A DNA stretch of 62,911 nt, filler included, from Octopus bimaculoides (lineage: Eukaryota), in NCBI RefSeq assembly GCF_001194135.2. It is 6 parts of 6 records of this genome, joined end to end, with 100 filler letters (N's around TTAATTAATTAA, not from the genome) between each part and the next. Parts side by side here need not be neighbours in the genome. Positions count along the whole stretch, not along the records: positions 59,144 to 62,911 come from NW_026366363.1; 5 more parts are not named here. One strand, 5' to 3'. The notes beneath the pieces were generated by a model. The model had not been told where the DNA came from. It did not search any database and saw only the letters and a list, made by a program, of their open reading frames with translations. The position numbers were made by a program, and so were the translations under genes. Below, in pieces: positions 15,460 through 62,911 of this stretch (positions within the stretch are counted from its first letter, which is position 1; the number at the start of each line of letters is the position of its first letter).

Positions 15460-15635
15460 TCGTAGGAGTGTTATTATGTGTATGTGTGCGTGTATGTAAA
15501 CGTTTATATGCGTACATGTGTGAATATTCAGACAAGTACGTGTGTATATGCATGCGTGCACATGTGTACATGCACACGTGTATGCTATTGAATTGGAATG
15601 TATTTGTGTTTGCCGATGTGTGTTCGTGTGTATGA

Positions 15636-15669
<34 letters not shown>

Positions 15670-15999: not shown

Positions 16000-16030
<31 letters not shown>

Positions 16031-16402: not shown

Positions 16403-16439
<37 letters not shown>

Positions 16440-16847: not shown

Positions 16848-16892
<45 letters not shown>

Positions 16893-17056
16893 CAGTGTGA
16901 ATGTATCTATATATGTGTATATGTAAAGGGTATGTATCCATGTGTATGTCTATGTGTGCATTTGTGTGTACGTATAACTGAATGTCTGTGCGTTTATGTG
17001 TTTATGTGTTTATGTATATGTATATCTATCTATCTATCTCTCTATCTATCTATCTA

Positions 17057-17094
<38 letters not shown>

Positions 17095-17143
17095 CGTCCA
17101 TCTGTTTGTCTGTACATACATACATACATACATACCTACATAC

Positions 17144-17180
<37 letters not shown>

Positions 17181-17200
17181 CAGTGTACATTTAAACACAT
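15460..17200. repeat. Degenerate (TG)/(TA)/(GA)/(TATC)/(TGTC) microsatellite field
   Basis: Direct reading. Confidence 0.9.
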
Positions 17201-17285
17201 AAGAGAGATGTCCATAATAAGACATCTAACCCGCTAGAAGGAGCAGTCAAACTCCAAACCACAATTAGGGATAATTTCGGAAGGG

Positions 17286-17329
<44 letters not shown>

Positions 17330-17769
17330 AATGAAAATGAGGGATTTGTTTGTTTCTCTTTCGAGCATTTTGAAGAATTGGGTAATATACGTGTAGGTGG
17401 AGGTGGTGGCCTTGAGCTGCGATCAGCTGGGATAAGATAGACGACGGGTGTTTGCGGAGACCTTAAGGGTGGGACGTCTGGTGACAACAATAGACACCCC
17501 TTCTCTTTTACAAACGCCACGATTCATTTCCACCTCCCCCTCCACTCCTTCCTCATCATCATCATCATCTTCGCTTCCACTTCCTCCTTTTTCTTTGCCA
17601 CTCCCACCACCACTAAGGCTACTTGATGATCATCATTCTCATCATCGTCATCATCATCACCATCATAATCACTTGCTCCACTTCTATTCTTCTTTTATTT
17701 CCTTCCTTCGTTGTTGCTCGTTTTTGTTTTTTGTTTTTGTTTATGGTACTTTCTGAACACTGCAAGCAA

Positions 17770-18008
17770 AAATAGGAAAGAGAATGCGAGAAAGAAGGAA
17801 AGAAAGAAAGAGAGGACAGAAAGAGAGGATGAAAGAAAGACAGAAAGAATGAATGAAAGAAAGAAAGAAAGAAAGAGAGGACAGAAAGAGAGGACAGAAA
17901 GAAAGGATGAAAGAAAGACAGAAAGAATGAATGAAAGAAAGAAAGAAAGAGAGGACAGAAAGAGAGGACAGAAAGAAAGGATGAAAGAAAGACAGAAAGA
18001 ATGAATGA

Positions 18009-18039
<31 letters not shown>

Positions 18040-18107
18040 GAAGGAAGGAGGAAGGAAAGGAAACGAATGAGTAAGAAATAAAGAAAGAAAGAAAGGAATG
18101 AGTAACA

Positions 18108-18143
<36 letters not shown>

Positions 18144-18370
18144 AGGAAAGTAAGAAGGAAAGAAAGAAAGAAGGTGAGGAGGAAGATAAGACGGAAAGAA
18201 TGAAAACGAAACAGTAAGAATCAAAGAATGAAAGAAAGAAAGAGAGAAAAAGAAAATAAGAAACGAATGAGTAAGAAAGAAAAAAGAAAGAAAGAAAAAG
18301 AAAGAGAGAATGAATGAATGAATGAAAGAAAGAAAGAAAAGAAAGAAATAAAGAGAGAAAGAAGGAAAGG
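17770..18370. repeat. Purine-rich (GAAA)n tract with a higher-order repeat of about 70 bp
   Basis: The unit gaggacagaaag...aggatgaaagaaagacagaaagaatgaatgaaagaaag occurs about three times in 17800-18010. Confidence 0.9.
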
Positions 18371-18829
18371 AGGCAAGCGCGTGCATGAGCGACTGCAGTA
18401 GATATCGAGCGAAACGCGAACGCAGGTCGAAGCGGGTGGCGTCAGGGACCCGACTCAACGTACGTTTCAATACTTCTGAATGCTTTGCCTGGTCGGCTGC
18501 AACACGTGTCGGGCGAAATCGCCGAGTAAATAAATCACGGAAGGAGGCACAATGGGAAGGTAAAATTGCGGACAAACTATTGACACGTGTGGTCGGGTCC
18601 CACCATGACCATCACTAGTTTTTATCATGCCACTATTAGGTACCAACAGTACTAATAACAATACTATCACCACCACCACCACCACAACCGCCATCATCCC
18701 TCTGTCACTCAAAACGCCAATGACAACAGCAACAACATGAACGTCATTGGCATCACGCCATACTTCAACCACTCAGCAGCTGTGAACTCCAATGTCGCTA
18801 CTATCAAGACACATCACGCTTTAAGACAA

Positions 18830-18838
18830 AAGCCGTAT

Positions 18839-18892
<54 letters not shown>

Positions 18893-19150
18893 CACTACTA
18901 CTACTACTAACATCACTACTACCACCACCACTCCTACTACTACTACTACTACTACTGCTACTACTACTACTTTGCCTTTCATACTTTCAGGGTCGATAAA
19001 TTAAGTACCAGTTGTGTACTGGGACCGATCTAATCCACTGGTCCCTTCCCCCAAAATTTCGGGCCTTGCGCCTAGAGTAGATAAGATTATTATTATTAGG
19101 AGTGGTTGTAGTAGTAGTAGTAGTAGAAGTAGTAGTAGTAGTAGTAATAG

Positions 19151-19216
<66 letters not shown>

Positions 19217-19270
19217 CACCACCACTACTACTACTACTAATTCTGCTACTACTACTACTACTACTACTAC

Positions 19271-19335
<65 letters not shown>

Positions 19336-19495
19336 TTACCATCACCACCACCGCTACTACTACTTACGACTACACAACTACTGCTAATAATAATATTAAT
19401 AATAAACCACCACCGCCACTACCACCACCACCATTACTACTACTACTATTACTACTACTACTACTACTACTACTATTACTACTACTACTACTATT
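18830..19495. repeat. Alternating (CTA)n and (TAG)n blocks
   Basis: Direct reading. Confidence 0.95.
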
Positions 19496-20189
19496 NNNNN
19501 NNNNNNNNNNNNNNNNNNNNNNNNNNNNNNNNNNNNNNNNNNNNNNNNNNNNNNNNNNNNNNNNNNNNNNNNNNNNNNNNNNNNNNNNNNNNNNNNNNNN
19601 NNNNNNNNNNNNNNNNNNNNNNNNNNNNNNNNNNNNNNNNNNNNNNNNNNNNNNNNNNNNNNNNNNNNNNNNNNNNNNNNNNNNNNNNNNNNNNNNNNNN
19701 NNNNNNNNNNNNNNNNNNNNNNNNNNNNNNNNNNNNNNNNNNNNNNNNNNNNNNNNNNNNNNNNNNNNNNNNNNNNNNNNNNNNNNNNNNNNNNNNNNNN
19801 NNNNNNNNNNNNNNNNNNNNNNNNNNNNNNNNNNNNNNNNNNNNNNNNNNNNNNNNNNNNNNNNNNNNNNNNNNNNNNNNNNNNNNNNNNNNNNNNNNNN
19901 NNNNNNNNNNNNNNNNNNNNNNNNNNNNNNNNNNNNNNNNNNNNNNNNNNNNNNNNNNNNNNNNNNNNNNNNNNNNNNNNNNNNNNNNNNNNNNNNNNNN
20001 NNNNNNNNNNNNNNNNNNNNNNNNNNGGTGATGGTGGTGGTGGTGGTGGTGGTGGTGGTGGTGGTGATAGTGGTGCTGGTGGCGGCCGTCGTCACCGTCG
20101 CAGTGAAGTATTGTATTGATACTTCAGTCTCGACCGACCAAAGCCTTGTCAGTAAATTTGGCAGACAGGAAACTGAAAGAAGCTTGTCG

Positions 20190-20535
20190 TTGGCTGTGAG
20201 GTAAGTAGTTTCCTCACCAACCACATGGTTCCGGGTTCAGTCCCAGTGCCTGGTACTTTGGGCAAGCGTCTTCTTCTGTAGCCTCGGGCCGACCAGAGCC
20301 TTGTGAGTGGATTCGATAGACGGGAACCGAAAGAATCCCATCGTATATATGCTTATATTTATGCATGAGTGTGTATATGTTTGTGTGTCTGTGTTCGCTC
20401 CCCACAACATCGCTTGACAATCGATGGTGGTATGTTTACGTCCCCGTAATATTAGAGGTTCGGCAAAAGAGATTGATAGAATAAGTACTAGGCTTACGAA
20501 GCATAAGTCCTGGGATCGATTTGCACGACTAAAGT
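20190..20535 (+). mobile_element. SINE family A, near full length
   Basis: Head, body and tail present; followed by an inverted tail fragment at about 20545-20610. Confidence 0.8.
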
Positions 20536-21715
20536 GTGTATTTTAGTCATTTGACTGTGGCCATGCTGGAGCACCGCCTTTAGTCGACCACATCGACCTC
20601 AGGTCTTATTCGTACGTCATCTATCGGCTACTTTGCCACCTGTGCATCCCTCTGCTTGTCCTATGAGTGTATGAGTGTGTGTGGGGGAGTGTTCAATAAC
20701 CAAAGCCAACTAACTGAATTATACCCACACAAGGTGACGATCAATCAATATTCCAGGTAATAATACAGGTAACTAACCCTGTTTGCACGAACCTGCTGTA
20801 ACAGTCAGTAGGGTGCGATCGGGGTAGGTAGAGGAGAAATGAGTCCTTTGAAGTAAGGAAAGCAATGAAGAGAAGGGGTGGGGTGAAAGAAGGGGGAAAG
20901 GGGTGGAATGGTTTGTATTGCTTTCCCCGCAGACTGACCGCAGCTCTGTGTACAAGGTAATCACCTGGACAAACTTACTTGAGAAGAATGGTCCAGCGAA
21001 AAGAAAAAAAATGAATATGGCGGGGATAGAGTTGGAAAAGAAGAGAGATAAATAAAGCAATAAAATTAACGTAAAATAATATTTAAAAATAAAAAAAAAG
21101 CTTTTTAAAATGCATGAAGGGAAATATGTGTGTGCGTGTTTGTGCGTGTGTGTGAGTGTATGTATGAGATTGGCACTTGGATGTGAAGTATCGTGGAAGA
21201 AGACACTGTAAGATCTTTGGAAACAGGTTTCTGTTCGCTCTTTAAAAACTAACCGGCGCAAATGAAATCGAGATTGCAGAAGTGAAATAGAAATATGATT
21301 GCAGCATATCCTGTGCATACATTTCATTAGTGGAGGCGCAATGGATGTTTTGCGTTCTTGTCTCATTATATGTATATATNNNNNNNNNNNNNNNNNNNNN
21401 NNNNNNNNNNNNNNNNNNNNNNNNNNNNNNNNNNNNNNNNNNNNNNNNNNNNNNNNNNNNNNNNNNNNNNNNNNNNNNNNNNNNNNNNNNNNNNNNNNNN
21501 NNNNNNNNNNNNNNNNNNNNNNNNNNNNNNNNNNNNNNNNNNNNNNNNNNNNNNNNNNNNNNNNNNNNNNNNNNNNNNNNNNNNNNNNNNNNNNNNNNNN
21601 NNNNNNNNNNNNNNNNNNNNNNNNNNNNNNNNNNNNNNNNNNNNNNNNNNNNNNNNNNNNNNNNNNNNNNNNNNNNNNNNNNNNNNNNNNNNNNNNNNNN
21701 NNNNNNNNNNNNNNN

Positions 21716-21716
21716 N

Positions 21717-21758
<42 letters not shown>

Positions 21759-21912
21759 GACGGGCTTCTTTCAGTTTCCATCTACCAAGTCCACTCACAA
21801 GGCTTTGGTCGGCCTGATGGTATAGTAGAAGACACTCGTCCTAGGTGCCAAGCAGTGGGACTGAAGCTGGAACCATGTGGCTGGAAAGCAAACTTGTTAC
21901 CACACAGCCACA
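21716..21912 (-). mobile_element. SINE family A, 5' half
   Basis: Reverse complement of the head and body, next to (AT)n and a gap. Confidence 0.8.
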
Positions 21913-22269
21913 TATATGTTTCATACTTTTCACTTTTCCTATTTTTAGCTTTTGAGACATCGTATACCTTGGACTACAGGTCAACATTATGAAATATATT
22001 CTGTCTTTTTTCGGCATGTGTTTGTGTAGTTGTGTGCGCCTGTATTGACTTATGCGTGTCTGTGTGTGCGCGCATGATTGTGTAATTGTGTTGGTGTGTG
22101 TGTGTGTGTGCGTGTGTGTATGTTGTGGCGATGATGTGGTTGAAGGATGAAAAACCTGTGTGATGCTAAGGCCGAGGCCGACCGGTGAAGCGTGACGCGG
22201 CCAACAAGAAAGAGCTGGCTGAAAAGGCAAAGATGGTTGGCAGGTTTAGAAGTCAGGCAACGTTGGTTA

Positions 22270-22999
22270 AAGATGGCGGCGGTATTAACAACTGTAACGG
22301 TGGTGGTGGTGGTGGTGGTTATGGTGGTGGCGGTGGTGGTGGTGGTGGTGATTGCGTTGATAGTGCTATAGGTGATAGTGATAATGCTGGTAGTGATGGT
22401 CGTATTGTTTTTAAAGATGGCGAAGGTGTTGGCGACGACCGCGGTCGTAACGGTTTTACTGCAATGGTCAAAGCTGTGGTGGCGAGGGTGGTGGCAATTA
22501 TGCTATTCATAGCCATGAGGGTGATGATAGTGATGATAGTGGTGGTGGTTGTCATCATCGTCGTCATCGTGGCAGTTAATGGTAATTACGATACTGGCGT
22601 TGATGGTGGTGGTGGTGGTGGTGGTGGTGGTGGGGAGTGATGGTGGAGAGGGTGGGGTTGCTGGTACTACTGCTAATGTCTGTGGTGCCCGTTAGTTTTC
22701 TGCTCGCCAGCCAGCCGGCCGGTCAGCCAGCCGATCCAACCCTCCTGCCCGGCCCCTGTTTCTTTGTTTGTCTGTCTGCCTGTCTGCATGGCTGTCTTGC
22801 TTGTTTGTGTGACTGGTACCTGCTAAGTGATGAGGAGGTATATTGGCAGGAGTAGGAAGAGGAGACGAGAGAATCAGAGGGAGAGAGAGAAAGAAGGGGA
22901 GGGACAGAAGAGTCGTATAAGGTAATGATGGCGGTGGTGATGGTGTGGTGTGGCGGTGGTAGGAGGGATATGAGGATAATTATGTTGGTGATAGAGACA

Positions 23000-23030
<31 letters not shown>

Positions 23031-23273
23031 CGATGATGATGATGATGACGATGATGATGATGATGATGACGATGACGATGACGATGATGATGACAATGAT
23101 GACGATGATGATGACGATGATGATGATAATGATGATGATAATTACGACGACGACGACGGCTACGTCGATGATGTTTATGATGAAGATGATGATGATGATG
23201 ATGAAGATGATGATGATGATGATGATGGTGGTGGTGATGATGGTGATGATGATGATGTTGATGATGTTGATGT

Positions 23274-23305
<32 letters not shown>

Positions 23306-23306
23306 T

Positions 23307-23355
<49 letters not shown>

Positions 23356-23357
23356 GT

Positions 23358-23407
<50 letters not shown>

Positions 23408-23410
23408 GCG
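22270..23410. repeat. (GGT)n-rich tract followed by a long (GAT)n tract
   Basis: The (GAT/GAC)n block spans about 23000-23405. Confidence 0.9.
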
Positions 23411-23669
23411 CTGTTGATATGGAGGAGAAAACGACAAGGAAGGAAATGTGAAGGAAGAGGAAGCAGCAAAAAAGAAAGAAAGAAAGAAAGAAAGAAAGAG
23501 AGAAAGAGAGAAAGGGGAGGGAAATGACTAAAAGAAGAGAGAGGGGTGGAGGCTGATGAAGAGTGAGCGGCGGACGAGAGAAGGATGAAAAGTTACTCAG
23601 AGTTGATGGTAAAGAAAATTGGGATGTGAAGGTTCTACTTCCATGCGTTTAGAAGACGAGGGCGAAGGA

Positions 23670-24600
23670 GAGAGAGGGGGAGGGCGAGAGAGAGAGAGAG
23701 AAAGGAGAGAAAGAAGAGGAATAGAGAGAGTGGCGGAGGGAGGTAGAGAAGTGTGTCAGATTGGCAGGGTTTCCGACAAGGGTTTTTTGATGGAAGTCAA
23801 CTGCAAGGTTTAATAGGTTTGGGTTTTGGTTTTCATGGCGGTTAGTTAGAGAGGGAGAGAGAGAGAGAGAGACAAATAGGAGAGAGTGAGAGAGAGGCAG
23901 AGAGTGGTTGAAAGAGAGGGAGAGAGAAAAGGAGATTGGGAGAGAGAAAAGGAGAGAGGGAGAGACAGACAGACAGAGAAAGAGAGAGAGAGAGACAAAC
24001 AGAGAGAGAATGAGAGAGAGGTATAGAGTGATAGTGAGAGGCAGAGAGGAAAGGAGAGAGGGAGAGACAGACAGACAGAAAGCAATAAAAAGAGAGAGAC
24101 AAAAAGGGAGAGAATGAGAGAGAGGTATAGAGTGGTAGAGAGAGGCAGAGAGGAAAAGAGAGAGAGGGGGGCAGAGAGTGGTAAAGAGAGGGAGAGACAA
24201 ACAGACAGAGAAAGAGAGAAAGAGAGAGAGACAAACAGGGAGAGAATGAGAGAGAGAGAGTTAATGCGTGTGTATGTGTGTCAGAGACGGAAGGGGAGAG
24301 TGAGTGAAAGAGGGAAAGAGTAGGAGGAGGAGGAGAGGAGCAGTCTGACAGAGTGATTGAGTGAGTGATGGAGCCAGTGATTGCTTGAGTGAGAGTGAGA
24401 GTGTAAAATGCGTAAGACTGAGGATGAGGGATGGAGGTAAGGATGAAGGAAATAAGGGAATGAGTGAAAGAATGAAAGAGGAAGTGATTGAATGAGCGTG
24501 AGAGCGAGTGAGTTAGTGAAAAAAGTTGGTGGATGAGTGAGACAGTGAGTGAATGCCTGATTGAGTGATTGAGAAAGTGAGTGCGCGAGTGGAAAGTAGT
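23670..24600. repeat. GA-rich degenerate satellite
   Basis: Recurrent gagagagaggtatagagtg and gggagagacagacagacagaga units. Confidence 0.85.
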
Positions 24601-26922
24601 AGAAATCCACCAATAATAATACATTTAAAATGTACAAAGCCTTACTGTGGGTAAAATAACAACGTAAATAAACCCTTTTTATGCTATTGATGCGGGGGGA
24701 AAATGGAGAGAGGAAAAATCTCAGTTTCGTGGTTTGCTGACCGTGTTTCAGAGAAAAACTGCTCAGTTTCCTCTCCCAATCAATAACACAGATCAGCTAC
24801 AATACAAAGCAGTCTAAAATTAGGCTAGCGCCAAAGTAGACAGCCCTAGACTGTTCCACATTAGTTAAACAATAGCTGCTTTATGCACGACACAGCGTAA
24901 ATCAGATGAAACAAGAAAAAATTAAACTTTACAGAGAGAGAGATAGAGAGACAGACAGAGGGAGAGAGAGAGAAAGATGAAGAGAAAAGGAGGCACAAAG
25001 AGACAGAGACAGAGAACGAAAGAAAGTTGTTGCTCAATGGGAAATAATCGCCCCTAAGTATATCCTGTTTTACTCTTCAGTGGAGAATCTCTCTCTCTCT
25101 CCCTCTCTCTCTATATATATGTATATATATATATTACAAATTAAAAGGGTAAAGGATTATCAATTTATTTGTTGGAGTCTCAGCTTTTTTAGCTGCTATT
25201 TCTGAACTTCGGTATGTGGTGAAGCAAATATNNNNNNNNNNNNNNNNNNNNNNNNNNNNNNNNNNNNNNNNNNNNTTAATTAATTAANNNNNNNNNNNNN
25301 NNNNNNNNNNNNNNNNNNNNNNNNNNNNNNNTATATATATATATATAGTTTTTTACGTTTCTTCTAAATAAATAATATTGCTTTCTAAATATATTACAGT
25401 GAAACCCCACCAGCTTACTTGAAAGAGAAATGTTTCCCCAACCACATAGTTCGGTATATGTATGTATGTATGTATGTATGTATATATGTTATGTATACAT
25501 TTGTGTGTGTCTGTGTCTGTGTTTGTCCCTCCACCATTGCTTGACAACCGATGTTGGTGTGTTTACGTCTCCGTAAATTAGCGCTTCGGGAAAGAGACTG
25601 ATAGAATATGTACCAGGCTTACAAAGAATAAGTCCAGGGGTTGATTTGTTCGACTAAATGTCCGCAGGCAAATGACTGAAACAAGTAAAAGAATGAAAGA
25701 ATAGATATGTGATACTATATCATCCAATTTATCATACTTTTTAAAAGCTATAGTTAGTGATTTAAAAGGAATTTGGCTGCAATTTCTAGTTCGAATATTC
25801 TCTTTTTGCGGTTTTCCCCTCTGTTTGTGAAAAACAGTCACTAGAGAGAAAACAAAATACGAAGATAAAACATGAAGCCATATGAAACTGTAATGCACTT
25901 ACGAGTGCACATACACAAATCGCATTGAATCACGTGTGTAAATGAGTTTATGTACGTACATGTGCTGAGAAGCCGGAAAAATGCGGGCTGCACCGAAGAG
26001 TACGAGGAACACGAGAAGTAGCTGTGGTGAGGAAGCTACAAAAATTGTGATAGCGATAGAGAAATAGTTATGACTTGAAGACATACAGATAGGAAAGAAA
26101 CAGAGAGGCAGGAAGAGGGAGGGAGAGACAGACAGACAGAGACAGAAAGTGGGAGCGAGAAACAAGCGTTGTAGTTGGTAGAAGGAAACAGAAAAAAGTC
26201 AGTGTGAAAGGAAGTGATATACTCTACTACCGAGAGATTACACGCTATGTCACATGAAAAATCGAAAGTGCAAGTGACATATCAGCTGATCAAATAATAA
26301 TACAAACACAACAGATTATTTATGTGGATATCAGTGAGAATATTTGGTCTTATTTAGTAAAAAAATATTATGTAAATTATTGAGGAATCAAAAGGAAATA
26401 GTATCGCTTTGTTGTTGACGTGTGTGTTTAAACGCTGCCAATAAACCTCTGTATTGCCACCATTATTTATACGAAACTTAGGTATTTAGCTCGTTAATAA
26501 ATGAAGCTAATTATTTTTCCGATTATTCTCTGTCGAGGTCTACTTCCCAGGACAGTTTCATTCATCAGGATGTGTAGTAAATGCAAACAGAAGTTAACAA
26601 CCACAATCTTCTGGAAGAAACCATCGCAAGAACCAAACAATCGATAAGGATAATGTAATGGAACTAAACGCGACAGTAAGACGTATATTATTTATGTCTT
26701 ATAATCAAACATACAGAGCTGATGTTATTTCATACGACCAGCGATCATCAAAAGAAAAGACAATATCATTTTACTTATGTTAATATTTTTAATGTTATAC
26801 GTATTTTAATGACAAGCCATAACATATATACAAAAACATCCACACACATATGTGTGTGCGCGCGCGCGTGTGCGTGTGAATATATATGTATATCGACACA
26901 GCGACACACACATATATATATA

Positions 26923-27776
26923 CGCGGTCTGATCAATATGTATCCGGACTGTTGCCATAGTAACGAAGTTAAAGCACGCAGAGTAGAGCTGATTGGTAAA
27001 GATTGACCTTGAACTCTGCCGTGCATGCGCACTAAGTTATAACGTTCGAGCTTACTTCCGTTGTTTACAGATGTGCTTCGAAGTAACGTGTGTAGCGTGT
27101 GTTCGTCGCATTGAATATGACAGATAACTTTGAGTAGAGAATCTGCACCAACTCTTGCCAAAAGCTTGGCGACAGCTGCTCAGACGCCTATGCAAAGTTT
27201 TCGAAAAGTTTTCATCGTTCTCGACACAATCAAGGAGAATTTGCGCAACTGAAACTCGAGTGTCTTTTCGGTAAGCTGAAAGCAGTTTTGACACAAACTT
27301 GTCAGACATGCGTCTCATACACAAATCTTCAGTGATAACGAACTGAACTGAACCGTAACTAATCTGCACATCTTCTGATAACTCACGGATGGCGAATCGA
27401 CGATTTCTCCTCACAATTGCACGTAAATCTGCGATGTTCTACTGATTGCAGGTCTCCCAGAACGTTCGTCACCATCGACATTTTTCGACCATACTGGAAA
27501 CATCTCAACCACTCGTACACTTGTGCGCGGCTCATACATTCCACTCCATGCACTTTCTACGACTTAATGTAAACCTCTAAGGAGGTATCGCCATGACAGC
27601 TTTCTCTGTCATAATCAATGCGACGATCACACGTCACACTCGTCATTTCTAAGCACTGTTGTAAACATCGGTGGTGAGCTAGAACGTTAAGATCAATCTG
27701 TGCCAAGCAGCTTCACTCTGCGTGCTGAAGCTTCGTTACTATGGCAACAGCCCAGATATTTATTGATCAGACTTCA
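26923..27776. mobile_element. Non-autonomous mariner made of two inverted 5' portions
   Basis: TA flanks and long imperfect TIRs (gtctgatcaata...ctgttgccatagtaacgaag). The minus strand encodes MSRAQVYEWL...ERSGRP...RRNRRFAIRELSEDVQISYGSV...KFVSKLL; the plus strand encodes a transposase N-terminus from ATG 27117. Confidence 0.85.
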
Positions 27777-27780
27777 TATG

Positions 27781-27825
<45 letters not shown>

Positions 27826-30603
27826 GCATAATTTTGATATTAGTTATATAATGCGTATATTGAGATACAATGTAGAGGAAAGTAAAAGAAATAATATTAA
27901 TTCATTTTAACAGATGCACTTAGAGACCAAAAAATCTAGTTTCTTAAAAAAAACTTTAACGAATACCGCATTTGGTACTCGGCACTAAATTGGCAGTAGA
28001 GTCGAATATTTTCTCCGTGTAATCTGACAGTGGATTTGATGATTTCTTTAATATTATCATCTTAATAGAAATAGAAGTTTATGCAAAAGTTAAACCATAA
28101 AAATCAATGACGTCAATAAAGAAAAAAGTAATAAGAGAAGTAGCGAAGAAAATACTAAATATTTCTCTTTAGATATTTTCGTGGGGAATGTACTGAAAGG
28201 AACGTAGTTAAATAACAGCTTGTTAAAACAAGCGGTACGATATGTACTAAGCTTCTTATGTGTAACCAGATACATGTATGTGCGTGCGTGCGTGCGTGTA
28301 AGTTTGTGAATATGTGCATGAGTATGTGCGTGTGTATATGTATGAAATGGTTGTGTGTATATATATGTGTATGTAAATATGGCAAATCTGTGTATCTATT
28401 AGTCTGTAACACTATGTATGTGTGTGTCTGTGTGAGTGTGTCTGTATTTGTGTCTATCTGTCTGTCTATCTGTTTGTTTGTGTCTATCTGTGTGTGTGCG
28501 TTTCTGTGAGTGTGTCTGTGTGTGTGTCTATCTGTCTGTCTGTCTGTTTGCTTGAGTCTATCTGTGTGTGTGGGTATGTGTCTACTCTCTTCTGTTAAAT
28601 CTGAGGATATACAAGCATTTAATGGAGAAATACTACAAGATTATCAAAAATAAGCAAGAGACTAGTCCTTGAAAAAAACTAGCTCAGGGAACTAGAAGCA
28701 AGGAGAGGAAGAGAGGCAATGATGAGGAATGATGAATATGTAGATAACAAGATAGACAGATATAGGCATATCTGCGAATGTGTGTGTGTGTGAGTGTGTA
28801 TGAGTGTGTAGTATGTGTGTATATGTATATATNNNNNNNNNNNNNNNNNNNNNNNNNNNNNNNNNNNNNNNNNNNNNNNNNNNNNNNNNNNNNNNNNNNN
28901 NNNNNNNNNNNNNNNNNNNNNNNNNNNNNNNNNNNNNNNNNNNNNNNNNNNNNNNNNNNNNNNNNNNNNNNNNNNNNNNNNNNNNNNNNNNNNNNNNNNN
29001 NNNNNNNNNNNNNNNNNNNNNNNNNNNNNNNNNNNNNNNNNNNNNNNNNNNNATATATATATATATATATATATATAGTGTAGTTCGTCCGTGTAAACTT
29101 CTCTATCATCTGATCGCCAGTAAGCTACATAAGCGTCTCAAGGGCCGTGAGCTTCGTGCAGTGCACCTATCAAATTGGCTATAAATGTTCACAGTAGGTT
29201 TCCTATATAGATTGAATTACAATTCTTTCTCCAACATTTAATACAAAGTATATTAGAGAATCTCGTGAGAATACAAGTACGTATATTTATATAAACACAT
29301 AAAGACACGCACCGTCGCGACTAAAACATTCAAAGTGGTAACTGAAACAAAGGTTATATGAATATACACATACATATATACATATATAATCCTTTCTACT
29401 ACAGACCCAATGTCTAATATATTTTAGGGGAAGGGTCTAGTAAACTACATCGATCCCAGATTTCAATTAGTTCTGATTTCATCGACCCTGAAAGGATTAA
29501 CAGCAAAATCGACTTCGGTGGAATTTATACATGTATAATATACATATATATACTAATACACGTATACACACGTTAACGTACACGTTAGCATACACACGAG
29601 CGGGCTCACACACATACGTACGCACATGCATTTTGCTAAACAAAAAACGTTACTTCTTTCAAAGGTTTTTTATGCAAAACAAACCTGTTCACTACTATCA
29701 CAGAGAGCCCATTCCTTTCAATGTAATTCTAATAAACTTGATATTTCAATTCTCAAAGCTTTGTTTTCTCATTTTTTAGTATATTTCACTAAAGTCCGTT
29801 TTGTAGATGACAATGAAAGAAGGCTTCTAAGGTTGAATGAANNNNNNNNNNNNNNNNNNNNNNNNNNNNNNNNNNNNNNNNNNNNNNNNNNNNNNNNNNN
29901 NNNNNNNNNNNNNNNNNNNNNNNNNNNNNNNNNNNNNNNNNNNNNNNNNNNNNNNNNNNNNNNNNNNNNNNNNNNNNNNNNNNNNNNNNNNNNNNNNNNN
30001 NNNNNNNNNNNNNNNNNNNNNNNNNNNNNNNNNNNNNNNNNNNNNNNNNNNNNNNNNNNNNNNNNNNNNNNNNNNNNNNNNNNNNNNNNNNNNNNNNNNN
30101 NNNNNNNNNNNNNNNNNNNNNNNNNNNNNNNNNNNNNNNNNNNNNNNNNNNNNNNNNNNNNNNNNNNNNNNNNNNNNNNNNNNNNNNNNNNNNNNNNNNN
30201 NNNNNNNNNNNNNNNNNNNNNNNNNNNNNNNNNNNNNNNNNNNNNNNNNNNNNNNNNNNNNNNNNNNNNNNNNNNNNNNNNNNNNNNNNNNNNNNNNNNN
30301 NNNNNNNNNNNNNNNNNNNNNNNNNNNNNNNNNNNNNNNNNNNNNNNNNNNNNNNNNNNNNNNNNNNNNNNNNNNNNNNNNNNNNNNNNNNNNNNNNNNN
30401 NNNNNNNNNNNNNNNNNNNNNNNNNNNNNNNNNNNNNNNNNNNNNNNNNNNNNNNNNNNNNNNNNNNNNNNNNNNNNNNNNNNNNNNNNNNNNNNNNNNN
30501 NNNNNNNNNNNNNNNNNNNNNNNNNNNNNNNNNNNNNNNNNNNNNNNNNNNNNNNNNNNNNNNNNNNNNNNNNNNNNNNNNNNNNNNNATATACAATATA
30601 TAT

Positions 30604-31512
30604 ATTAGAGAGTAAAAGTATGAAAAGTTATATCTTAAAAATCACACCAGAGATAAGTCCATAATACAAGCAATATTGTTTTAATAAATAAATAGATAAA
30701 TTACAGCTATGATCAGTAAAAAATATTTTTGAAAGTACTTACGATCGTTTCACGAATTATACTACCTCTCAAAATGAAATCTAAAGTTAATAACCATTAT
30801 AGGGAAGTATATCCACTCGTCAGAGAAAAGGTTGAATTTCAGTGTAGTAAACGGAATGATGGAAATGCTATTTAAAATCGGATGAGAAAGGTGTTGTTTA
30901 AAAAGTATAAATCTGTGTTGATATAAATCTGAGCTAAAAAATTTTGGGACTATAAAAGAAATGTATGGTAAAATCTGTGGAAAGATTCCGGAGGAAATGA
31001 ATTATGGGAATTCTATTTACACACAGCTATTACAGACTCTTACCACGGATTTTATCATGGATTTATTTTATTTTTCAACATTTTTAGCTCAAGTGGAGAT
31101 GAATTATAGGAATTATAACTACACACAGCCATAACGGATTCTTAACACGGATTGTGCCGTGGATTTATTTTATTTTTTCAAAATTTACAGCTCAAATTTA
31201 CATCAACACAGATTTATACTTTTTAAACGACACCTTTCTCATCCGATTTTAAATAGCATTTCCATCATTCCGTTTACTACACTGAAATTCATCCTTTTCT
31301 CTGACGAGTGGATATACTTCCCAATAATGATTATTAACTTTAGATTTCATTTCGAGAGGTAGTATAAGCATGAAACGATCGTAAGTACTTTCCCAAAAAT
31401 TTTTAACGATCAAAGGTGTACTTCATCTATTTATTAATACAATATTTCTTATATTATGGACTTATATCTACTGTGATTTTTAAGATATAACTTTTCTTAC
31501 GTTCACTCTAAT
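30604..31512. mobile_element. Foldback-type element with about 340-bp inverted arms
   Basis: Arm 30604-30946 is the reverse complement of 31179-31512 at high identity. The spacer holds a two-copy direct repeat of about 95 bp. Confidence 0.8.
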
Positions 31513-58940: not shown

Positions 58941-59152
58941 ATGGCAGTGACTTCTACGACGATAAAAGCTGTTTTGTGGTTGCTGCCATAATTGTTGTTT
59001 TTGGTTTGTGTGGTGGCGGTGATGGCGGCGATTGTGATGGTAGNNNNNNNNNNNNNNNNNNNNNNNNNNNNNNNNNNNNNNNNNNNNTTAATTAATTAAN
59101 NNNNNNNNNNNNNNNNNNNNNNNNNNNNNNNNNNNNNNNNNNNTACGTTACC

Positions 59153-59225
59153 GGCCAGCCATGAGACTCGAACTCACATCCCTGTGATTATGCATCAGGT
59201 GCTTTACCATTAAGCTAAACTGCCC
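59153..59225 (-). other. tRNA-like sequence with CAT-centred loop (pseudo-tRNA or SINE head)
   Basis: GGGCAGTTTAGCTTAATGGTAAAGCACCTGATGCATAATCACAGGGATGTGAGTTCGAGTCTCATGGCTGGCC. D and T arms fold; the anticodon stem has a 2-nt insertion and the acceptor stem a mismatch. Confidence 0.5.
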
Positions 59226-59586
59226 AGTATCATCATCATTAACAAGCAACTGGATTTGTACTCTTCCAGTAGACCAGGCTTGCTATTGCTGTCACTTTCT
59301 TTCGTAGATGGTCACAATGTGGTTGTGGCGTTGGTTGCAGATTAGTGGAGGTGACCAAGTCAAGTTTGCCCATATGAACTTGGTGTCTGGGCAAGGATCT
59401 ATTTAACTTACACCCAAACNNNNNNNNNNNNNNNNNNNNNNNNNNNNNNNNNNNNNNNNNNNNNNNNNNNNGAATGAATACTACAAGGTAACTTAAGTAG
59501 AGTTGACCATGTGCATATTTGAACAAGGTCTCTGGTTTGAAAATAATCTCTTCCCTCTCCGCCCTACATACGCACAAATATCTTAA

Positions 59587-59816
59587 CCCTTTTGATACCA
59601 ACCCAGCTGAAACCGCCTCTGGCTCTNNNNNNNNNNNNNNNNNNNNNNNNNNNNNNNNNNNNNNNNNNNNNNNNNNNNNNNNNNNNNNNNNNNNNNNNNN
59701 NNNNNNNNNNNNNNNNNNNNNNNNNNNNNNNNNNNNNNNNNNNNNNNNNNNNNNNNNNNNNNAAAGTAATTGAAAGAAACACAGAGCATTTCAAAATAAA
59801 TACAGTAATGAAGGGG
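59587..59816. mobile_element. piggyBac-like MITE, middle in a gap
   Basis: TTAA|CCCTTT...AAGGGG|TTAA termini, with TTAA at 59583-59586 and 59817-59820. Confidence 0.55.
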
Positions 59817-59961
59817 TTAAAGACCCTGAAAATAGATAACGGGTGCAGGCCATCAACCAATTAAATCATTAAAGTTAACAACAAAAAGAAAAAAATAGTT
59901 CCACAATTCTCAGAATTTATATTCCACTAATTTTTCTGCATTGTTCTGACAATCTCCTCAG

Positions 59962-60052
59962 AATTTGGTCTTAGCAGATTCCGGCATCTATCGTTGTAAT
60001 GCTAGCAACAAGTATGGAATGGTTTCAGCAACAAGGACACTTATAGTTCGAT
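59962..60052 (+). CDS. Nrg: Exon: C-terminal half of an Ig domain (L1-family Ig5-like)
   Basis: ctcctcag|AAT...CGA T|gtgagt, 91 nt, phase 0 to 1. Translates NLVLADSGIYRCNASNKYGMVSATRTLIVR (D-x-G-x-Y-x-C motif). An in-frame TGA just upstream supports the acceptor. Confidence 0.85.
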
Positions 60053-62698
60053 GTGAGTATATTTATTTGTCACTTATTTCCTTCCCACCCATCTGTCTAG
60101 GATGTTACTAGCTAACACGGGCACTCCAATGTCTGCAAGAGCCATATTTCACTTTGTATGTCTACTCCAGGATGCTGATGGAGAACTGCTCCTTATTTAT
60201 ACATAAACCATGCATCTTTGCAGACAAGACAAAATTTAAACACTTTCCAGTAGATTTGTTGGTGTGTAAAGGGGAAGATGCAAAACTCACATGTGTTGTN
60301 NNNNNNNNNTAGATTTGTTGGTGTGTAAAGGGGAAGATGCAAAACTCACATGTGTTGTCATGACTGACCCTATGCAGATTGACAATCTGCATGTTGTTTG
60401 GTTCAAGGATGATGATATCATAGCCATTGATGAGAAGAGAATCATCCAGAAGCCCAAAGNNNNNNNNNNGATGATATCATAGCCATTGATGAGAAGAGAA
60501 TCATCCAGAAGCCCAAAGACAATTCATTGATCATCAGGAGTGTAAAACAAAGGGATGCTGGCCTCTATTCATGTGTGGCCACAAATGGATTGGATTTTAT
60601 CAAAGCGTTTGCCCGTCTCCAAGTAAGAGGTAGGTTCATTTTACATGTATGTGTGCCATTCTCCCACTCTCCAGTTGTCACCTATGTCTGTGTTCCCCAG
60701 GATTCAATTCTAACTATGAGACTGGTCCTTCAATAAAGTAACAGATACGGATGGTGATTAGCTAGGAGTGTAATTTGCAGTCACAAGTTTCTGAGTTCAA
60801 TCTCTCTGTAAGGTATCTTGGACAAGAAACATATATATATANNNNNNNNNNTATATATATATGTTTCTTGTCCAAGATACCTTACAGAGAGATTGAACTC
60901 ATATATATGCATATGTATGTATAAATATATATATGCATATAAATGTATGTATATATGTAAAAAAAAAATTAGTGAAAAGAGTTGAGAAAAATTTTTTCCA
61001 AAATTCCATGTGAAATATATGGAAAAGAAGGAAAATGCACAAAAATGTTATGTTGGGAAAAATATATTTATGAAATAAAAAATATTTACATAGTCAACCA
61101 GTTTCGCTTCTACTCTTCATAATGAAGTAGTTAATGTTAATGTTATAATTTCATGCTATCATAAGTTGTCATTCTACATCAGTAGATCAGATATTTTGTA
61201 AGACACAGACACACGCACACACACACGGATGTATATACATACACACAAACATAATTCATATTTCATTGCAGTCAAGATAAGAATTGAAGTCTCTCCATCG
61301 AATCTGGAGGTGAACAAAGAGGCAGATGCAAAGTTCATGTGTGCTGCCACAACTGACTCCATGGAGGTCAACAACCTGCAGATCACATGGCTGAAGGATG
61401 ATAAGGTCATAGACATTGATGAGGAAAGAGTCATCCAGAATTACAAAACTGGTTCATTGACCATCAGGAATGTAACCAGAAATGATGTTGGCCGCTATAC
61501 ATGTGTGGCCACAAATGGATTGAATGTTGTCAATGCCTCAGCCCTTCTCACAATCAAAGGTAAGCTCATTTTGTTCACCCACACACATATATAAGCATCA
61601 GCTTAAAAGTTCATGGGCTGACCAAGATAAATGANNNNNNNNNNNNNNNNNNNNNNNNNNNNNNNNNNNNNNNNNNNNNNNNNNNNNNNNNNNNNNNNNN
61701 NNNNNNNNNNNNNNNNNNNNNNNNNNNNNNNNNNNNNNNTCCTGTTGCTTAAAAATGTCAGCAAAAGCAAATATGAAGTTGATCAAGAGCAGATTTGGTG
61801 TCATCACTGCAATACTAGTTTCCAGCAAAGAGTTTCTTCATTTTGGGGAATGGATGATTGTCAAATGGGGCTTATATTCAGAATAGGGATGGTGATCAAC
61901 TATTCCAAAACCACAGTGATGCACAGCAGCCATTGAAAGTAAGGACTTGTGTGCAGGGGAATTGTCTTAATAAAACAAGAGCACTTTTGTTAGTTTTCCT
62001 AGGAGTTTGGTCTTCATAGCCCTTCATAACTGCCTCATGTATGCATATGTATGAAAGTTTGAGTGTGTGTATGTTTGTGTCTCATTCTCTTGTTATCATG
62101 TGATTGTTGCAAATGAAAGTTGATCATTTCTTCCATTTTACAAAAACATAAGGTGACAAGCTGGCTGAACTGTGAGAACACTGAACAAAATACTTAGCAG
62201 TATTTCGTCCTTTACATTCTAAGTCCAAATTCTACCAAGGTTGACTTGGCCTATCATCAACGAGTCCAGAGTCAATAAAAAAAAAATGACCAGTTAAGTA
62301 ATGGGGCCGATATAACTGATTAGTTCCCTCTCCTCAAAAAGTAATGGCCCTGTGCTGAAATTTGAAAATATATTTGGCAAAACCATGTCTTGCTACCTAT
62401 AGAGAAATATTACTTTATTTGGAAATAGGTGAGTGCTGGCAACAGGAAGAGCATCCAGCTATGGAAATTCTGCCTTAATAAACTATGTTTGACTCATGCA
62501 AGCATGAGGCATGGGTCTTATGATGCTGCTGCTGATTAGATATGATGATTATGTGTGTGTATGATAGTGATGCTCTTCTCTTTCAGTTACAGGTACCCAG
62601 CCACCTGTGATGTTAATCAACCTACCTGCCCAGGTACTGTTTAAAGAGTCAGAGATTGTGGCACTTCCATGCAAGGCCAGTGGTGAACCACAACCTAC
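59962..62698 (+). CDS. Nrg: Partial L1/neuroglian-family Ig cell adhesion gene, join(59962..60052,60224..60629,61272..61559,62587..62698); 5' and 3' exons not seen
   Basis: Four segments with canonical AG/GT boundaries and compatible phases translate without stops into I-set Ig domains. Motifs match L1-family Ig5, Ig6, Ig6 and Ig1. The symbol is family-level; orthology is not established. Confidence 0.8.
60224..60629 (+). CDS. Nrg: Exon: complete Ig domain, Ig6-like copy A (true length 288 nt)
   Basis: ttgcag|AC...AGA G|gtaggt. Removing two 10-N gaps and their 49-bp duplicated overlaps gives (Y)KTKFKHFPVDLLVCKGEDAKLTCVVMTDPMQIDNLHVVWFKDDDIIAIDEKRIIQKPKDNSLIIRSVKQRDAGLYSCVATNGLDFIKAFARLQVR, with the canonical C...W...Y-x-C. 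Confidence 0.85.
61272..61559 (+). CDS. Nrg: Exon: complete Ig domain, Ig6-like copy B
   Basis: ttgcag|TC...AAA G|gtaagc, 288 nt, phase 1-1. Translates (V)KIRIEVSPSNLEVNKEADAKFMCAATTDSMEVNNLQITWLKDDKVIDIDEERVIQNYKTGSLTIRNVTRNDVGRYTCVATNGLNVVNASALLTIK. Confidence 0.9.
62587..62698 (+). CDS. Nrg: Exon: N-terminal half of an Ig domain (L1-family Ig1-like)
   Basis: ctctttcag|TT...CCT AC|gtaagt, phase 1 to 2. Translates (V)TGTQPPVMLINLPAQVLFKESEIVALPCKASGEPQPT. A second in-frame acceptor at 62592 gives a 106-nt exon. Confidence 0.8.
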
Positions 62699-62911
62699 GT
62701 AAGTATTGTTGTTTGAGTGTAGTGGGGGTGGTGTAGTCGTGTGATTGTGGTGGTGGCAGTGTGGACATGATAATTTTGTGGTGTGCAGATATGTGGTGGT
62801 GTAGTGGAAGGAGATGCTGTAGGGAGAAGGGTTTTATGAAAAGTATTACACCTTCTTTCTCTCCTTCTTTCCCTTTCTTTCTCAGCACATATATATATAT
62901 ATATATATATA

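What the first reader, a model, noticed from the sequence alone, without database searches (positions are those of the whole stretch)
59962..62698. L1/neuroglian-like gene in which Ig6 is followed by a new Ig1 instead of fibronectin-III: possible concatenated or cassette Ig array
Seen: four spliceable exons with compatible phases in the order Ig C-half, full Ig, full Ig, Ig N-half. The last (QPPVM...LPCKASGEPQP) joins in frame to exon B as ...ALLTIK-V/G-TQPP. I found no signal-peptide exon, stop exon or FnIII exon in the sequenced part of the 1-kb interval, although 105 N remain. Established: L1-family proteins are 6 Ig + 5 FnIII + TM. The CVATNGL(D/N) ending matches Ig6 (compare L1 CVASTELD, fly Nrg CVARTRLD) and PP-V...C-x-A-S-G-x-P matches Ig1. 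Inference: either one giant protein with repeated Ig1-6 blocks, or alternative whole-ectodomain cassettes spliced to shared leader and constant exons. The latter would be a protocadherin/Dscam-like diversity system built from L1 parts.
Basis: partly seen in the sequence, partly recalled or inferred. Interest (0 to 1): 0.85.

Follow-up and report, generated by a model that had tools for sequence, protein, structure and literature searches.

The report
Octopus neuroglian-derived tandem Ig-block array
This small Octopus bimaculoides scaffold is the joint between two repeat units of a tandem array copied from the Ig1-Ig6 part of the nerve-cell adhesion gene neuroglian, and it most likely encodes a fast-evolving, Ig-only, probably secreted chain rather than a Dscam-like set of alternative cassettes.

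Summary
The piece is a whole 3,768-bp Octopus bimaculoides scaffold with four phase-compatible exons. These are the second half of Ig5, an Ig6, a second Ig6 copy (Ig6') and the first half of Ig1, each assigned by its best match to canonical octopus neuroglian.

The two 10-N gaps in exon B are uncollapsed 49-bp overlaps. Once collapsed, exon B is 288 nt, open, and aligns without gaps to its O. vulgaris orthologue. The 105-N gap lies in an intron. The whole piece is collinear with O. vulgaris, so there is no misjoin.

In O. vulgaris and O. sinensis the same Ig6-to-Ig1a junction recurs in head-to-tail arrays of Ig1-Ig6 exon blocks. These blocks use neuroglian's exon partition. They carry no leader, FN3 or TM exons, and they end in a conserved Gly-Pro-stop exon.

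In O. sinensis the one array fetched (L005, the type orthologous to O. vulgaris L007) is convergent with canonical neuroglian. Gene models in three species splice across the junction in series.

Exons diverge faster than introns (dN/dS about 0.8) but avoid indels and stops.

Verdict: a concatenated Ig-block paralogue is supported; a protocadherin/Dscam-like cassette system is not. No full-length transcript was seen.

The parts
59962..60052 (+). Exon A: second half of an Ig5-type domain (Ig5b), 91 nt, ends in phase 1
   Evidence: 83% identical to residues 62-91 of canonical neuroglian Ig5. Orthologous to O. vulgaris L006 5317-5409. Splice sites.
60224..60629 (+). Exon B: complete Ig6-type domain. 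True length is 288 nt (phase 1-1) once two assembly artefacts are removed (60300-60358 and 60460-60518).
   Evidence: 49-bp exact direct duplicates flank both 10-N gaps. The collapsed ORF is open. Ungapped 95-aa alignment, 80% identical, to O. vulgaris L006 9914-10198. Best domain is Ig6 at 99 bits, and the best PDB single domain is neurofascin Ig6.
60792..60901 (.). Assembly artefact in the B-C intron: a 10-N gap (60842-60851) flanked by a 50-bp inverted duplicate
   Evidence: The flanks map about 0.8 kb apart in O. vulgaris. No coding consequence.
61272..61559 (+). Exon C: second complete Ig6-type domain (Ig6'), 288 nt, phase 1-1. It is a paralogue of exon B and the fastest-evolving exon.
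   Evidence: 46% identical to B without gaps. Best domain is Ig6 at 111 bits. Its orthologue is O. vulgaris L006 12777-13067, 63% identical at the amino-acid level, dN/dS 1.06.
61560..62592 (+). Intron between Ig6' and the next unit's Ig1a, which is the unit junction. It contains the 105-N gap at 61635-61739.
   Evidence: Collinear with L006 13068-17348. No leader, FN3 or TM homology here or in the O. vulgaris and O. sinensis equivalents. An in-frame stop lies upstream of exon D at 62568, read directly from the sequence.
62593..62698 (+). Exon D: first half of Ig1 (Ig1a) of the next repeat unit. It starts in phase 1 and ends in phase 2. An alternative acceptor at 62587 is the one used in the NCBI model.
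   Evidence: 60% identical to residues 2-36 of canonical Ig1. Orthologous to L006 17349-17453, which is followed there by Ig1b/Ig2a, Ig2b, Ig3, Ig4, Ig5 and Ig6 in order.

Best explanation
The piece is the junction between two units of a tandem array. The array arose by repeated segmental duplication of the Ig1-Ig6 exon block of the octopus L1-family gene neuroglian: Ig1a, Ig1b+Ig2a, Ig2b, Ig3a, Ig3b, Ig4a, Ig4b, Ig5a, Ig5b, Ig6.

The window's unit type carries an extra Ig6 copy (Ig6'). Ig6-type exons are phase 1-1 and Ig1a opens in phase 1. The last Ig6 or Ig6' exon of one unit can therefore splice to Ig1a of the next and keep the frame.

The predicted product is a chain of L1-type Ig modules with no fibronectin-III domains, no membrane span and no cytoplasmic tail. 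It ends two codons after the last Ig6. If a leader is used, as in the O. sinensis model, it would be a soluble, secreted protein, analogous in logic to insect hemolin.

Shown here: the array structure, its neuroglian origin, the conserved splice sites and terminal exon, the strand arrangement, and the fast but frame-preserving evolution.

Inferred: that the serial splicing in the gene models reflects real mRNAs, that the protein is secreted, and any recognition or immune-type role.
For: - Species and scaffold: (P0001 is an O. bimaculoides protein whose only contig is 3,768 bp long).
- Domain identity of each exon.
- Collinear orthology with O. vulgaris L006.
- Array maps: L006 reads Ig5, Ig6, Ig6', [Ig1..Ig5, Ig6, Ig6'], [Ig1..Ig5, Ig6end] with a period of about 36.2 kb. 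L007 reads Ig6, [Ig1-4, Ig6], [Ig1-5, Ig6end]. L005 (O. sinensis) is analogous.
- Canonical neuroglian has the same exon partition, followed by FN3/TM exons.
- Splice sites are conserved in all units and all three species.
- A conserved terminal exon ...tttcag|GT CCT TAG follows the last Ig6 in L005, L006 and L007.
- Serial splicing across unit junctions appears in the models P0001, P0031, P0155/P0168 and P0166.
- The O. vulgaris isoforms were added by PASA from Iso-Seq/RNA-seq, which implies transcription: PMC10700109.
- Coding constraint between O. bimaculoides and O. vulgaris: one in-frame indel in 720 exon bp against 22 indels in 2,162 non-exon bp (7.3 expected, Poisson P=0.005), and no stops (P about 0.05 by simulation).
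- A bivalve L1-type gene shows the same Ig6-to-Ig1a junction across a 555-bp intron with no leader ORF, and then continues to FN3 and TM.
Against: - No full-length, evidence-backed transcript was seen.
- All O. vulgaris models start at internal Met codons and skip Ig3.
- The only model with a leader (P0031) spans 493 kb and engulfs unrelated genes.
- dN/dS is about 0.8 overall and 1.06 for exon C, which is compatible with relaxed constraint.
- The O. sinensis array has frameshifts in an Ig6 exon and in Ig5a, either real or assembly errors.
- No newer O. bimaculoides protein model containing these exons turned up.
- Units within an array are 98.6-98.7% identical. That is close to O. vulgaris heterozygosity of 1.22%, so one unit per array could be a falsely duplicated haplotype.
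Confidence: 0.6

Rival explanations
1. Decaying or non-functional partial duplicates. The arrays are recent segmental duplications of the 5' half of neuroglian, possibly inflated by haplotype duplication in the assemblies. They would be transcribed at most as noise, and the gene models would be artefacts of homology-based annotation.
For: - dN/dS is 0.8, and 1.06 for exon C.
- O. sinensis has frameshifts in Ig6 (L005 about 9962) and Ig5a (L005 about 30580-30591).
- The models are fragmentary, inconsistently named and start at internal Met codons.
- P0031 spans 493 kb.
- Unit identity is close to the heterozygosity level.
- No O. bimaculoides v2 model was found.
Against: - Exons show a sevenfold deficit of indels relative to flanking non-coding DNA. 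The single exon indel is in frame, and there are no stops despite 12% divergence.
- All splice sites and the terminal exon are conserved in three species.
- Distinct old unit types (Ig6, Ig6', Ig6end, L007-type) each have intact orthologues across species.
- Alternative isoforms in O. vulgaris come only from transcript-based PASA updates.
Confidence: 0.22
2. Exons B and C (Ig6 and Ig6') are mutually exclusive alternative exons, like Dscam exon 9 variants, so each mRNA carries only one of them. This could hold inside the concatenated-array reading.
For: - B and C have the same length (288 nt) and the same phase (1-1). They are paralogous at 46% identity without gaps.
- The NCBI model P0001 joins A directly to C.
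- Some O. vulgaris models join non-adjacent Ig6 exons (P0153/P0167).
Against: - O. vulgaris models P0155/P0168 contain both exons in series.
- The skipping of B in P0001 is explained by the two gap artefacts that break B's frame in that assembly.
- Phase 1-1 is generic for Ig-domain exons, so phase compatibility does not discriminate.
Confidence: 0.1
3. One reading: alternative whole-ectodomain cassettes. Each Ig1-Ig6 block would be a variable unit joined by cis- or trans-splicing to a shared leader and to neuroglian's FN3-TM-cytoplasmic constant exons, giving protocadherin/sDscam-like receptor diversity.
For: - The arrays lie within about 0.02-0.6 Mb of canonical neuroglian on the same chromosome.
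- The last Ig6 exon keeps a phase-1 gtaag donor, like canonical Ig6.
- Precedent exists for tandem 5' Ig cassettes and for trans-splicing in chelicerate sDscam (titles and abstracts of PMC4835542 and PMC9258826 as listed; neither paper was read).
Against: - No leader exon or leader-like ORF with a correct phase lies in any unit junction in three species.
- There are no FN3/TM exons in or within 10-12 kb after the arrays.
- That donor is used by a conserved Gly-Pro-stop terminal exon.
- In O. sinensis the fetched array (L005, orthologous to O. vulgaris L007, not to the window's L006-type array) and canonical neuroglian are on opposite strands, 3' ends facing and 17 kb apart, which rules out cis-splicing there.
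- All models splice the blocks in series.
Confidence: 0.04

Closest known systems
Neuroglian / L1 family (L1CAM, neurofascin, NrCAM, CHL1)
   Same: Every exon's best match is the corresponding Ig domain of octopus neuroglian at 50-83% identity. The exon partition and phases are identical. The locus is next to the canonical gene. The Ig6 signature C-x-x-T-D-P/S-M-E/Q...L-x-I/V-x-W-x-K-D...CVATNGL is shared.
   Different: There are no FN3 domains, no transmembrane segment and no cytoplasmic ankyrin-binding tail. The Ig1-Ig6 block is repeated head to tail, with an extra Ig6 in the window's unit type and Ig5 absent from the L007-type inner units. It evolves much faster than the canonical gene. Canonical Ig6 is 76% identical between Octopus and Sepia, whereas array orthologues are only 63-81% identical within Octopus.
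Hemolin (lepidopteran secreted four-Ig immune protein related to neuroglian Ig1-Ig4)
   Same: Both are built only from L1/neuroglian-type Ig domains, without FN3 or TM, so the product is soluble. Both are lineage-specific offshoots of the adhesion gene. Hemolin appears among the PDB hits for exon B (1bih). The relation of hemolin to neuroglian is from my own knowledge; one search shows only, from its listed abstract, that PMC9163686 describes hemolin as an IgSF immune protein.
   Different: Hemolin has a single four-domain horseshoe. The octopus arrays chain two or more six- or seven-domain blocks. They arose independently in molluscs. No expression or immune data exist for them.
Dscam1 exon clusters, chelicerate sDscam and clustered protocadherin 5' cassettes
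   Same: All involve tandem duplication of Ig-encoding exons or exon blocks at a neuronal adhesion-receptor locus. Exons B and C have the equal length and phase typical of mutually exclusive exons.
   Different: There is no per-cassette leader or promoter exon and no shared downstream constant exons. The available models use the blocks in series, not as alternatives.
Solemya velum L1-type gene (KAL5014246.1, P0148) with repeated Ig1-Ig6 blocks
   Same: It has the same Ig6-to-Ig1a exon junction and the same exon partition. The junction intron is 555 bp and has no leader ORF.
   Different: In the bivalve the last block continues into FN3 domains, a mucin-like repeat and a TM segment, giving a membrane protein with twelve or more Ig domains. 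It is a hypothetical model only, and it probably arose by an independent duplication.

Membership tests
L1 family of IgCAMs (neuroglian/L1CAM/neurofascin) | Six N-terminal Ig domains homologous to L1 Ig1-Ig6, in order | tested here: met
   Per-domain best hits for A-D. Ordered Ig1..Ig6 exon series in L005, L006 and L007 with the canonical exon partition.
L1 family of IgCAMs (neuroglian/L1CAM/neurofascin) | Three to five fibronectin type III domains after Ig6 | tested here: not met
   No FN3 tblastn hit in the arrays or in the 10-12 kb downstream. The canonical locus L008 and Solemya L009 do give FN3 hits with the same query.
L1 family of IgCAMs (neuroglian/L1CAM/neurofascin) | Single transmembrane segment and a conserved cytoplasmic tail (ankyrin-binding) | tested here: not met
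   The arrays end in a conserved Gly-Pro-stop exon directly after the last Ig6. There is no hit to the TM/cytoplasmic part of neuroglian.
Dscam-type mutually exclusive exon cluster | Tandem paralogous exons of the same length and phase | tested here: met
   B and C are both 288 nt, phase 1-1, and 46% identical without gaps.
Dscam-type mutually exclusive exon cluster | Exactly one variant included per mRNA | not testable with these tools
   No transcript reads were available. O. vulgaris models include both exons. The O. bimaculoides model skips B, but B is broken by assembly artefacts.
Clustered protocadherin / sDscam-type variable 5' cassettes | Each variable cassette has its own first (leader) exon | tested here: not met
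   No leader homologue lies in any unit junction. The best leader-like ORF (L007:1114) has phase-2 donors and no DNA similarity to the canonical leader. An in-frame stop lies upstream of exon D.
Clustered protocadherin / sDscam-type variable 5' cassettes | Shared constant exons downstream on the same strand | tested here: not met
   In O. sinensis, neuroglian is on the + strand at 5,813,657-5,909,543 and the fetched array (L005, orthologous to O. vulgaris L007, not to the window's L006-type array) is on the - strand at 5,926,629-5,959,279, so they are convergent. No FN3/TM exons follow the arrays.
Peroxidasin / hemicentin (names given by the public annotations) | Peroxidase plus LRR domains (peroxidasin); VWA, EGF and fibulin-type modules with more than 40 Ig domains (hemicentin) | tested here: not met
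   Only Ig-type Pfam families hit the window's spliced protein. The nearest relative by far is neuroglian.

The most novel reading that the evidence does not exclude
The arrays may encode a rapidly diversifying family of secreted proteins, each a chain of several neuroglian-type Ig1-Ig4 'horseshoe' modules, used for recognition (immune or self/non-self, or as soluble modulators of neuroglian adhesion). Diversity would come from concerted tandem duplication, from exon-focused sequence turnover (exons diverge 1.8 times faster than their introns, at synonymous sites too, which hints at gene conversion between units), and from variable inclusion of whole units or domains (models that skip Ig3, or that join Ig6 of one unit to Ig6 of the next). 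Trans-splicing of the last Ig6 to neuroglian's FN3 exon is not formally excluded, but it has no support.
Probability: 0.2. Interest if true: 0.7.

Novelty: new variant of a known kind. Interest (0 to 1): 0.5.

Why it matters
Cephalopod nervous-system genomics has centred on the protocadherin and zinc-finger expansions. An L1/neuroglian-derived, FN3-less, tandemly repeated Ig-block gene has not been described in the papers I could search. Its pieces sit in public annotations under misleading names: peroxidasin homolog, neurofascin-like, neuroglian-like and hemicentin-1-like.

If it is expressed as predicted, it would be a mollusc counterpart of hemolin. That would make it a second, independent case of an adhesion-receptor ectodomain turned into a soluble, fast-evolving protein. 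It also shows that L1-type Ig1-Ig6 blocks can be concatenated in frame, which is seen in a bivalve too.

There is a practical point as well. The window's scaffold shows how such repeats break short-read assemblies, through uncollapsed overlaps and a stray 3.8-kb scaffold. It also shows how automated annotation then mislabels and fragments the genes.

Tried and rejected
P0001 was used instead.
- The top of that hit list was swamped by giant multi-Ig proteins with summed scores. Only P0031, P0093 and P0148 were informative.
- Look-ups of P0156, P0155 and P0153 found no record, because only the longest isoform is indexed. P0031's locus was too long to return DNA.
- The leader search by short-query tblastn and regex gave only noise. 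The best hit, MKLSPIIIILAGACTL at L007:1114, was rejected because both nearby donors are phase 2 and there is no DNA similarity to the canonical leader exon.
- The O. sinensis terminal exon ATPAAITTIV... (L005 42535-42648) was judged spurious. It has a weak acceptor and lies outside the O. vulgaris models. The conserved GP-stop exon lies upstream of it.
- The terminal exon has no counterpart in the canonical neuroglian locus. The many hits there come from a roughly 300-bp dispersed repeat just upstream of it.
- The skin-mucus proteome supplements held none of the five UniProt accessions and no 'hemicentin-1-like' entry. The ink and mucus papers mention only 'neuroglian isoform'.
- ARAGORN found no tRNA in the tRNA-like stretch at the 5' end of the piece.
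- The absence of transcript-derived (Logan) proteins is uninformative, because canonical neuroglian has none in the database either.
Full report
**What the piece is.** The range 59144-62911 is a complete 3,768-bp scaffold of Octopus bimaculoides. The only near-identical database protein is XP_014790332.1 (P0001, 'peroxidasin homolog, partial'), and its sole contig is 3,768 bp long. D has an alternative acceptor at 62587, which the NCBI model uses.

**Gaps, tested first.**
- The 10-N gaps at 60300-60309 and 60460-60469 are each flanked by an exact 49-bp direct duplicate. They are contig overlaps that the assembler failed to merge.
- Removing gap plus duplicate gives an exon B of exactly 288 nt, phase 1-1, without stops. 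It aligns over all 95 codons without a gap to one uninterrupted exon of O. vulgaris. Taken literally, each gap would add 59 nt and destroy the frame. That probably explains why the NCBI model P0001 skips B.
- The gap at 60842-60851 is flanked by a 50-bp inverted duplicate and lies in an intron.
- The 105-N gap lies in the C-D intron. Its flanks map collinearly to O. vulgaris L006 13108 and 13632, and nothing neuroglian-like lies between them.
The scaffold does lack several kb of intron that O. vulgaris has (3.8 kb against 13.4 kb).

**Domain identity.** Pfam sees only Ig families (I-set E=2.7e-38). Against solved structures, contactin-2 aligns A-B-C as the end of Ig4, then Ig5 and Ig6. The best single-domain match of B is neurofascin Ig6. 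Against the six Ig domains of canonical octopus neuroglian the assignment is unambiguous:

| Exon | Best domain | Identity | Bits (next best) |
|---|---|---|---|
| A | Ig5, second half | 83% | 53.9 (22.7) |
| B | Ig6 | 50.5% | 99 (35) |
| C | Ig6 | 57.9% | 111 (37) |
| D | Ig1, first half | 60% | 46.6 (25) |

B and C are paralogues of each other, 46% identical with no gaps. The series is therefore Ig5b, Ig6, Ig6', Ig1a.

**Relatives.** A search of 1.84 billion representatives was mostly swamped by giant Ig proteins, but it yielded three informative sequences.
- XP_036370269.1, O. sinensis 'neurofascin-like' (P0031): a leader, then Ig1-4 and Ig6, followed directly by GTQPPVILINP...LPCKASGEPQPT, which is a second Ig1, and then the block again.
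- A canonical Sepia NRCAM (P0093).
- A Solemya velum protein (P0148) with two Ig1-6 blocks followed by FN3 and TM.

A second search added O. sinensis 'neuroglian-like' (P0154), O. vulgaris 'hemicentin-1-like' isoforms (P0153, P0155 and cluster mates) and canonical neuroglian of three Octopus species. P0155 and P0168 contain the orthologues of B, C and D in series, continuing through Ig1, Ig2, Ig4, Ig5 and Ig6.

**Genomic structure.** I fetched four loci: O. sinensis CM016885.1:5916629-5969279 (L005), O. vulgaris OX597842.1:7901323-7996414 (L006), OX597842.1:7304284-7379543 (L007), and the canonical O. sinensis neuroglian locus (L008). I mapped neuroglian's domains onto them with tblastn.
- The canonical gene reads leader, Ig1a, Ig1b+Ig2a, Ig2b, Ig3a, Ig3b, Ig4a, Ig4b, Ig5a, Ig5b, Ig6, then FN3 onwards.
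- The arrays use the same partition but repeat it head to tail.
- L006 reads Ig5, Ig6, Ig6', [Ig1...Ig5, Ig6, Ig6'], [Ig1...Ig5, Ig6end], with a period of about 36.2 kb.
- L007 reads Ig6, [Ig1-4, Ig6], [Ig1-5, Ig6end].
- L005 is the O. sinensis counterpart of L007's 3' part.
- The window is orthologous to the Ig5b-Ig6-Ig6'-Ig1a junction of L006.
- No leader, FN3, TM or cytoplasmic exon was found in any array or in its 10-12 kb flanks.
- Splice sites are conserved in every unit and species.
- After the last Ig6 of all three arrays lies a conserved small exon...tttcag|GT CCT TAG, which encodes Gly-Pro-stop. It has no counterpart in the canonical locus.

**Relation to canonical neuroglian.** In O. 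sinensis, neuroglian lies on the + strand at 5,813,657-5,909,543. The fetched array (L005, the L007-type counterpart) lies on the - strand at 5,926,629-5,959,279. The two are convergent, with 3' ends 17 kb apart, so this array cannot be cis-spliced to neuroglian's constant exons. For the window's own L006-type array, the strand relative to neuroglian was not measured. It is only inferred from the O. vulgaris accession order and the shared + strand of L006 and L007. The P0031 model spans 493 kb, engulfs unrelated genes, and ends 30 bp before P0154 at a frameshift inside an Ig6 exon. These models are fragments of one array, not separate genes.

**Evolution.**
- Units within an array are 98.6-98.7% identical over as much as 30 kb. 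This is less divergent than O. vulgaris against O. sinensis (about 94-98%), and close to O. vulgaris heterozygosity of 1.22% (PMC10700109).
- The cause is therefore either very recent duplication or concerted evolution, or else one unit per array is a duplicated haplotype. The Ig6-to-Ig1a junction does not depend on that question.
- Older unit types (Ig6, Ig6', L007-type Ig6, Ig6end) form a clade apart from canonical cephalopod Ig6. Each window exon pairs with its O. vulgaris orthologue. That tree is a neighbour-joining tree on about 95 residues without support values, so it is only indicative.
- Between O. bimaculoides and O. vulgaris, exon sites differ at 88 of 720 positions (12.2%) against 150 of 2,162 (6.9%) outside exons (Fisher P=2e-5).
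- Exons carry one indel, which is in frame, against 22 outside exons (7.3 expected; Poisson P=0.005). They carry no stops (simulated P about 0.05).
- dN/dS by the Nei-Gojobori method is 0.40 for A, 0.68 for B, 1.06 for C and 0.60 for D, and 0.80 overall. dS (0.18) also exceeds intron divergence.
- The frame is thus protected while residues turn over quickly. The cysteines, the tryptophan and the D-x-G-x-Y-x-C core are kept.

**Interpretation.** The best reading is a neuroglian-derived, Ig-only paralogue whose repeated blocks are spliced in series into one reading frame that stops right after the last Ig6. The product would be a soluble chain of L1-type modules.

Serial splicing is what every model shows: Gnomon in two species and EVM/PASA in the third. 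PASA-added isoforms imply transcript support in O. vulgaris. However, I saw no reads, no full-length model exists, and secretion rests on a single dubious leader assignment.

The pseudogene reading keeps appreciable weight because of the near-neutral dN/dS, the O. sinensis frameshifts and the fragmentary models. The alternative-cassette reading fails each testable criterion. Mutually exclusive use of B and C remains possible but has no support.

**Literature.** Searches found no description of this locus. Proteome papers mention only 'neuroglian isoform', and their supplements lack the array accessions.

Noticed in passing
L009 (Solemya velum JBHNWI010000513.1:29368415-29418467, reversed) 13857-31347: A bivalve L1-type gene also has an Ig6 exon (13857-14144) followed, after a 555-bp intron with no leader ORF, by Ig1a (14699) and a full second Ig1-Ig6 block. 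That block runs into FN3 exons (30973 onward) and a TM segment. An upstream 773-aa Ig model on the same strand suggests a third block.
   Followed up: partly
window 59962-62698 against L006 4215-17666: Exons diverge 1.8 times faster than the surrounding introns between O. bimaculoides and O. vulgaris (12.2% against 6.9%). Synonymous divergence (0.18) also exceeds intron divergence. This is unusual and hints at gene conversion between paralogous units or at exon-focused mutation.
   Followed up: partly
L005 about 9962 and about 30580-30591: The O. sinensis array has apparent frameshifts inside an Ig6 exon and inside Ig5a. The first one caused NCBI to split the array into two gene models (XP_036370269.1 and XP_029652301.2) that lie 30 bp apart. 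Whether these are real mutations or long-read indel errors is unknown. The O. vulgaris orthologues are intact.
   Followed up: partly
L006 and L007 (O. vulgaris gene models P0153, P0155, P0166-P0169): All six annotated O. vulgaris isoforms skip both Ig3 exons, although tblastn finds them. All six also start at internal Met codons. P0153 and P0167 join the Ig6 exon of one unit directly to the Ig6 exon of the next.
   Followed up: no
O. sinensis CM016885.1, about 6.01-6.12 Mb (locus, 344179-451389, opposite strand): A 1,872-aa multi-Ig gene model lies on the opposite strand inside the 493-kb span of the P0031 model, together with unrelated genes (a metallo-beta-lactamase-fold gene and a ubiquitin-activating E1 gene). 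Its relation to the arrays was not examined.
   Followed up: no
L001-L004 (TARA and other marine metagenome contigs, P0002): A 339-aa uninterrupted ORF spans about four L1-type Ig domains, running through Ig5 and Ig6 and then into DRPNPPSKV, the start of FN3. It occurs identically on short contigs from four marine metagenome samples. No introns interrupt the Ig domains, so it comes from an intron-poor eukaryote or from cDNA-like material. It shows the canonical Ig6-to-FN3 order.
   Followed up: no
L006 84701-84980 and dozens of sites in L008; window about 62140-62330 and 59144-59230: A dispersed repeat of about 300 bp (SINE-like) lies immediately upstream of the arrays' terminal exon and has dozens of copies in the neuroglian locus. 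The window's introns also carry sequences that look like repeats. The tRNA-like 5' end of the piece is not called as a tRNA.
   Followed up: partly
window 60145/60196, 62037/62315, 62558/62560: At several points that are not marked by N, the O. bimaculoides scaffold lacks 1-4 kb that O. vulgaris has in the same introns. For example, the A-B intron is 171 bp here against 4.5 kb in O. vulgaris. This reflects either repeat insertions in O. vulgaris or silent collapses in the short-read assembly.
   Followed up: no
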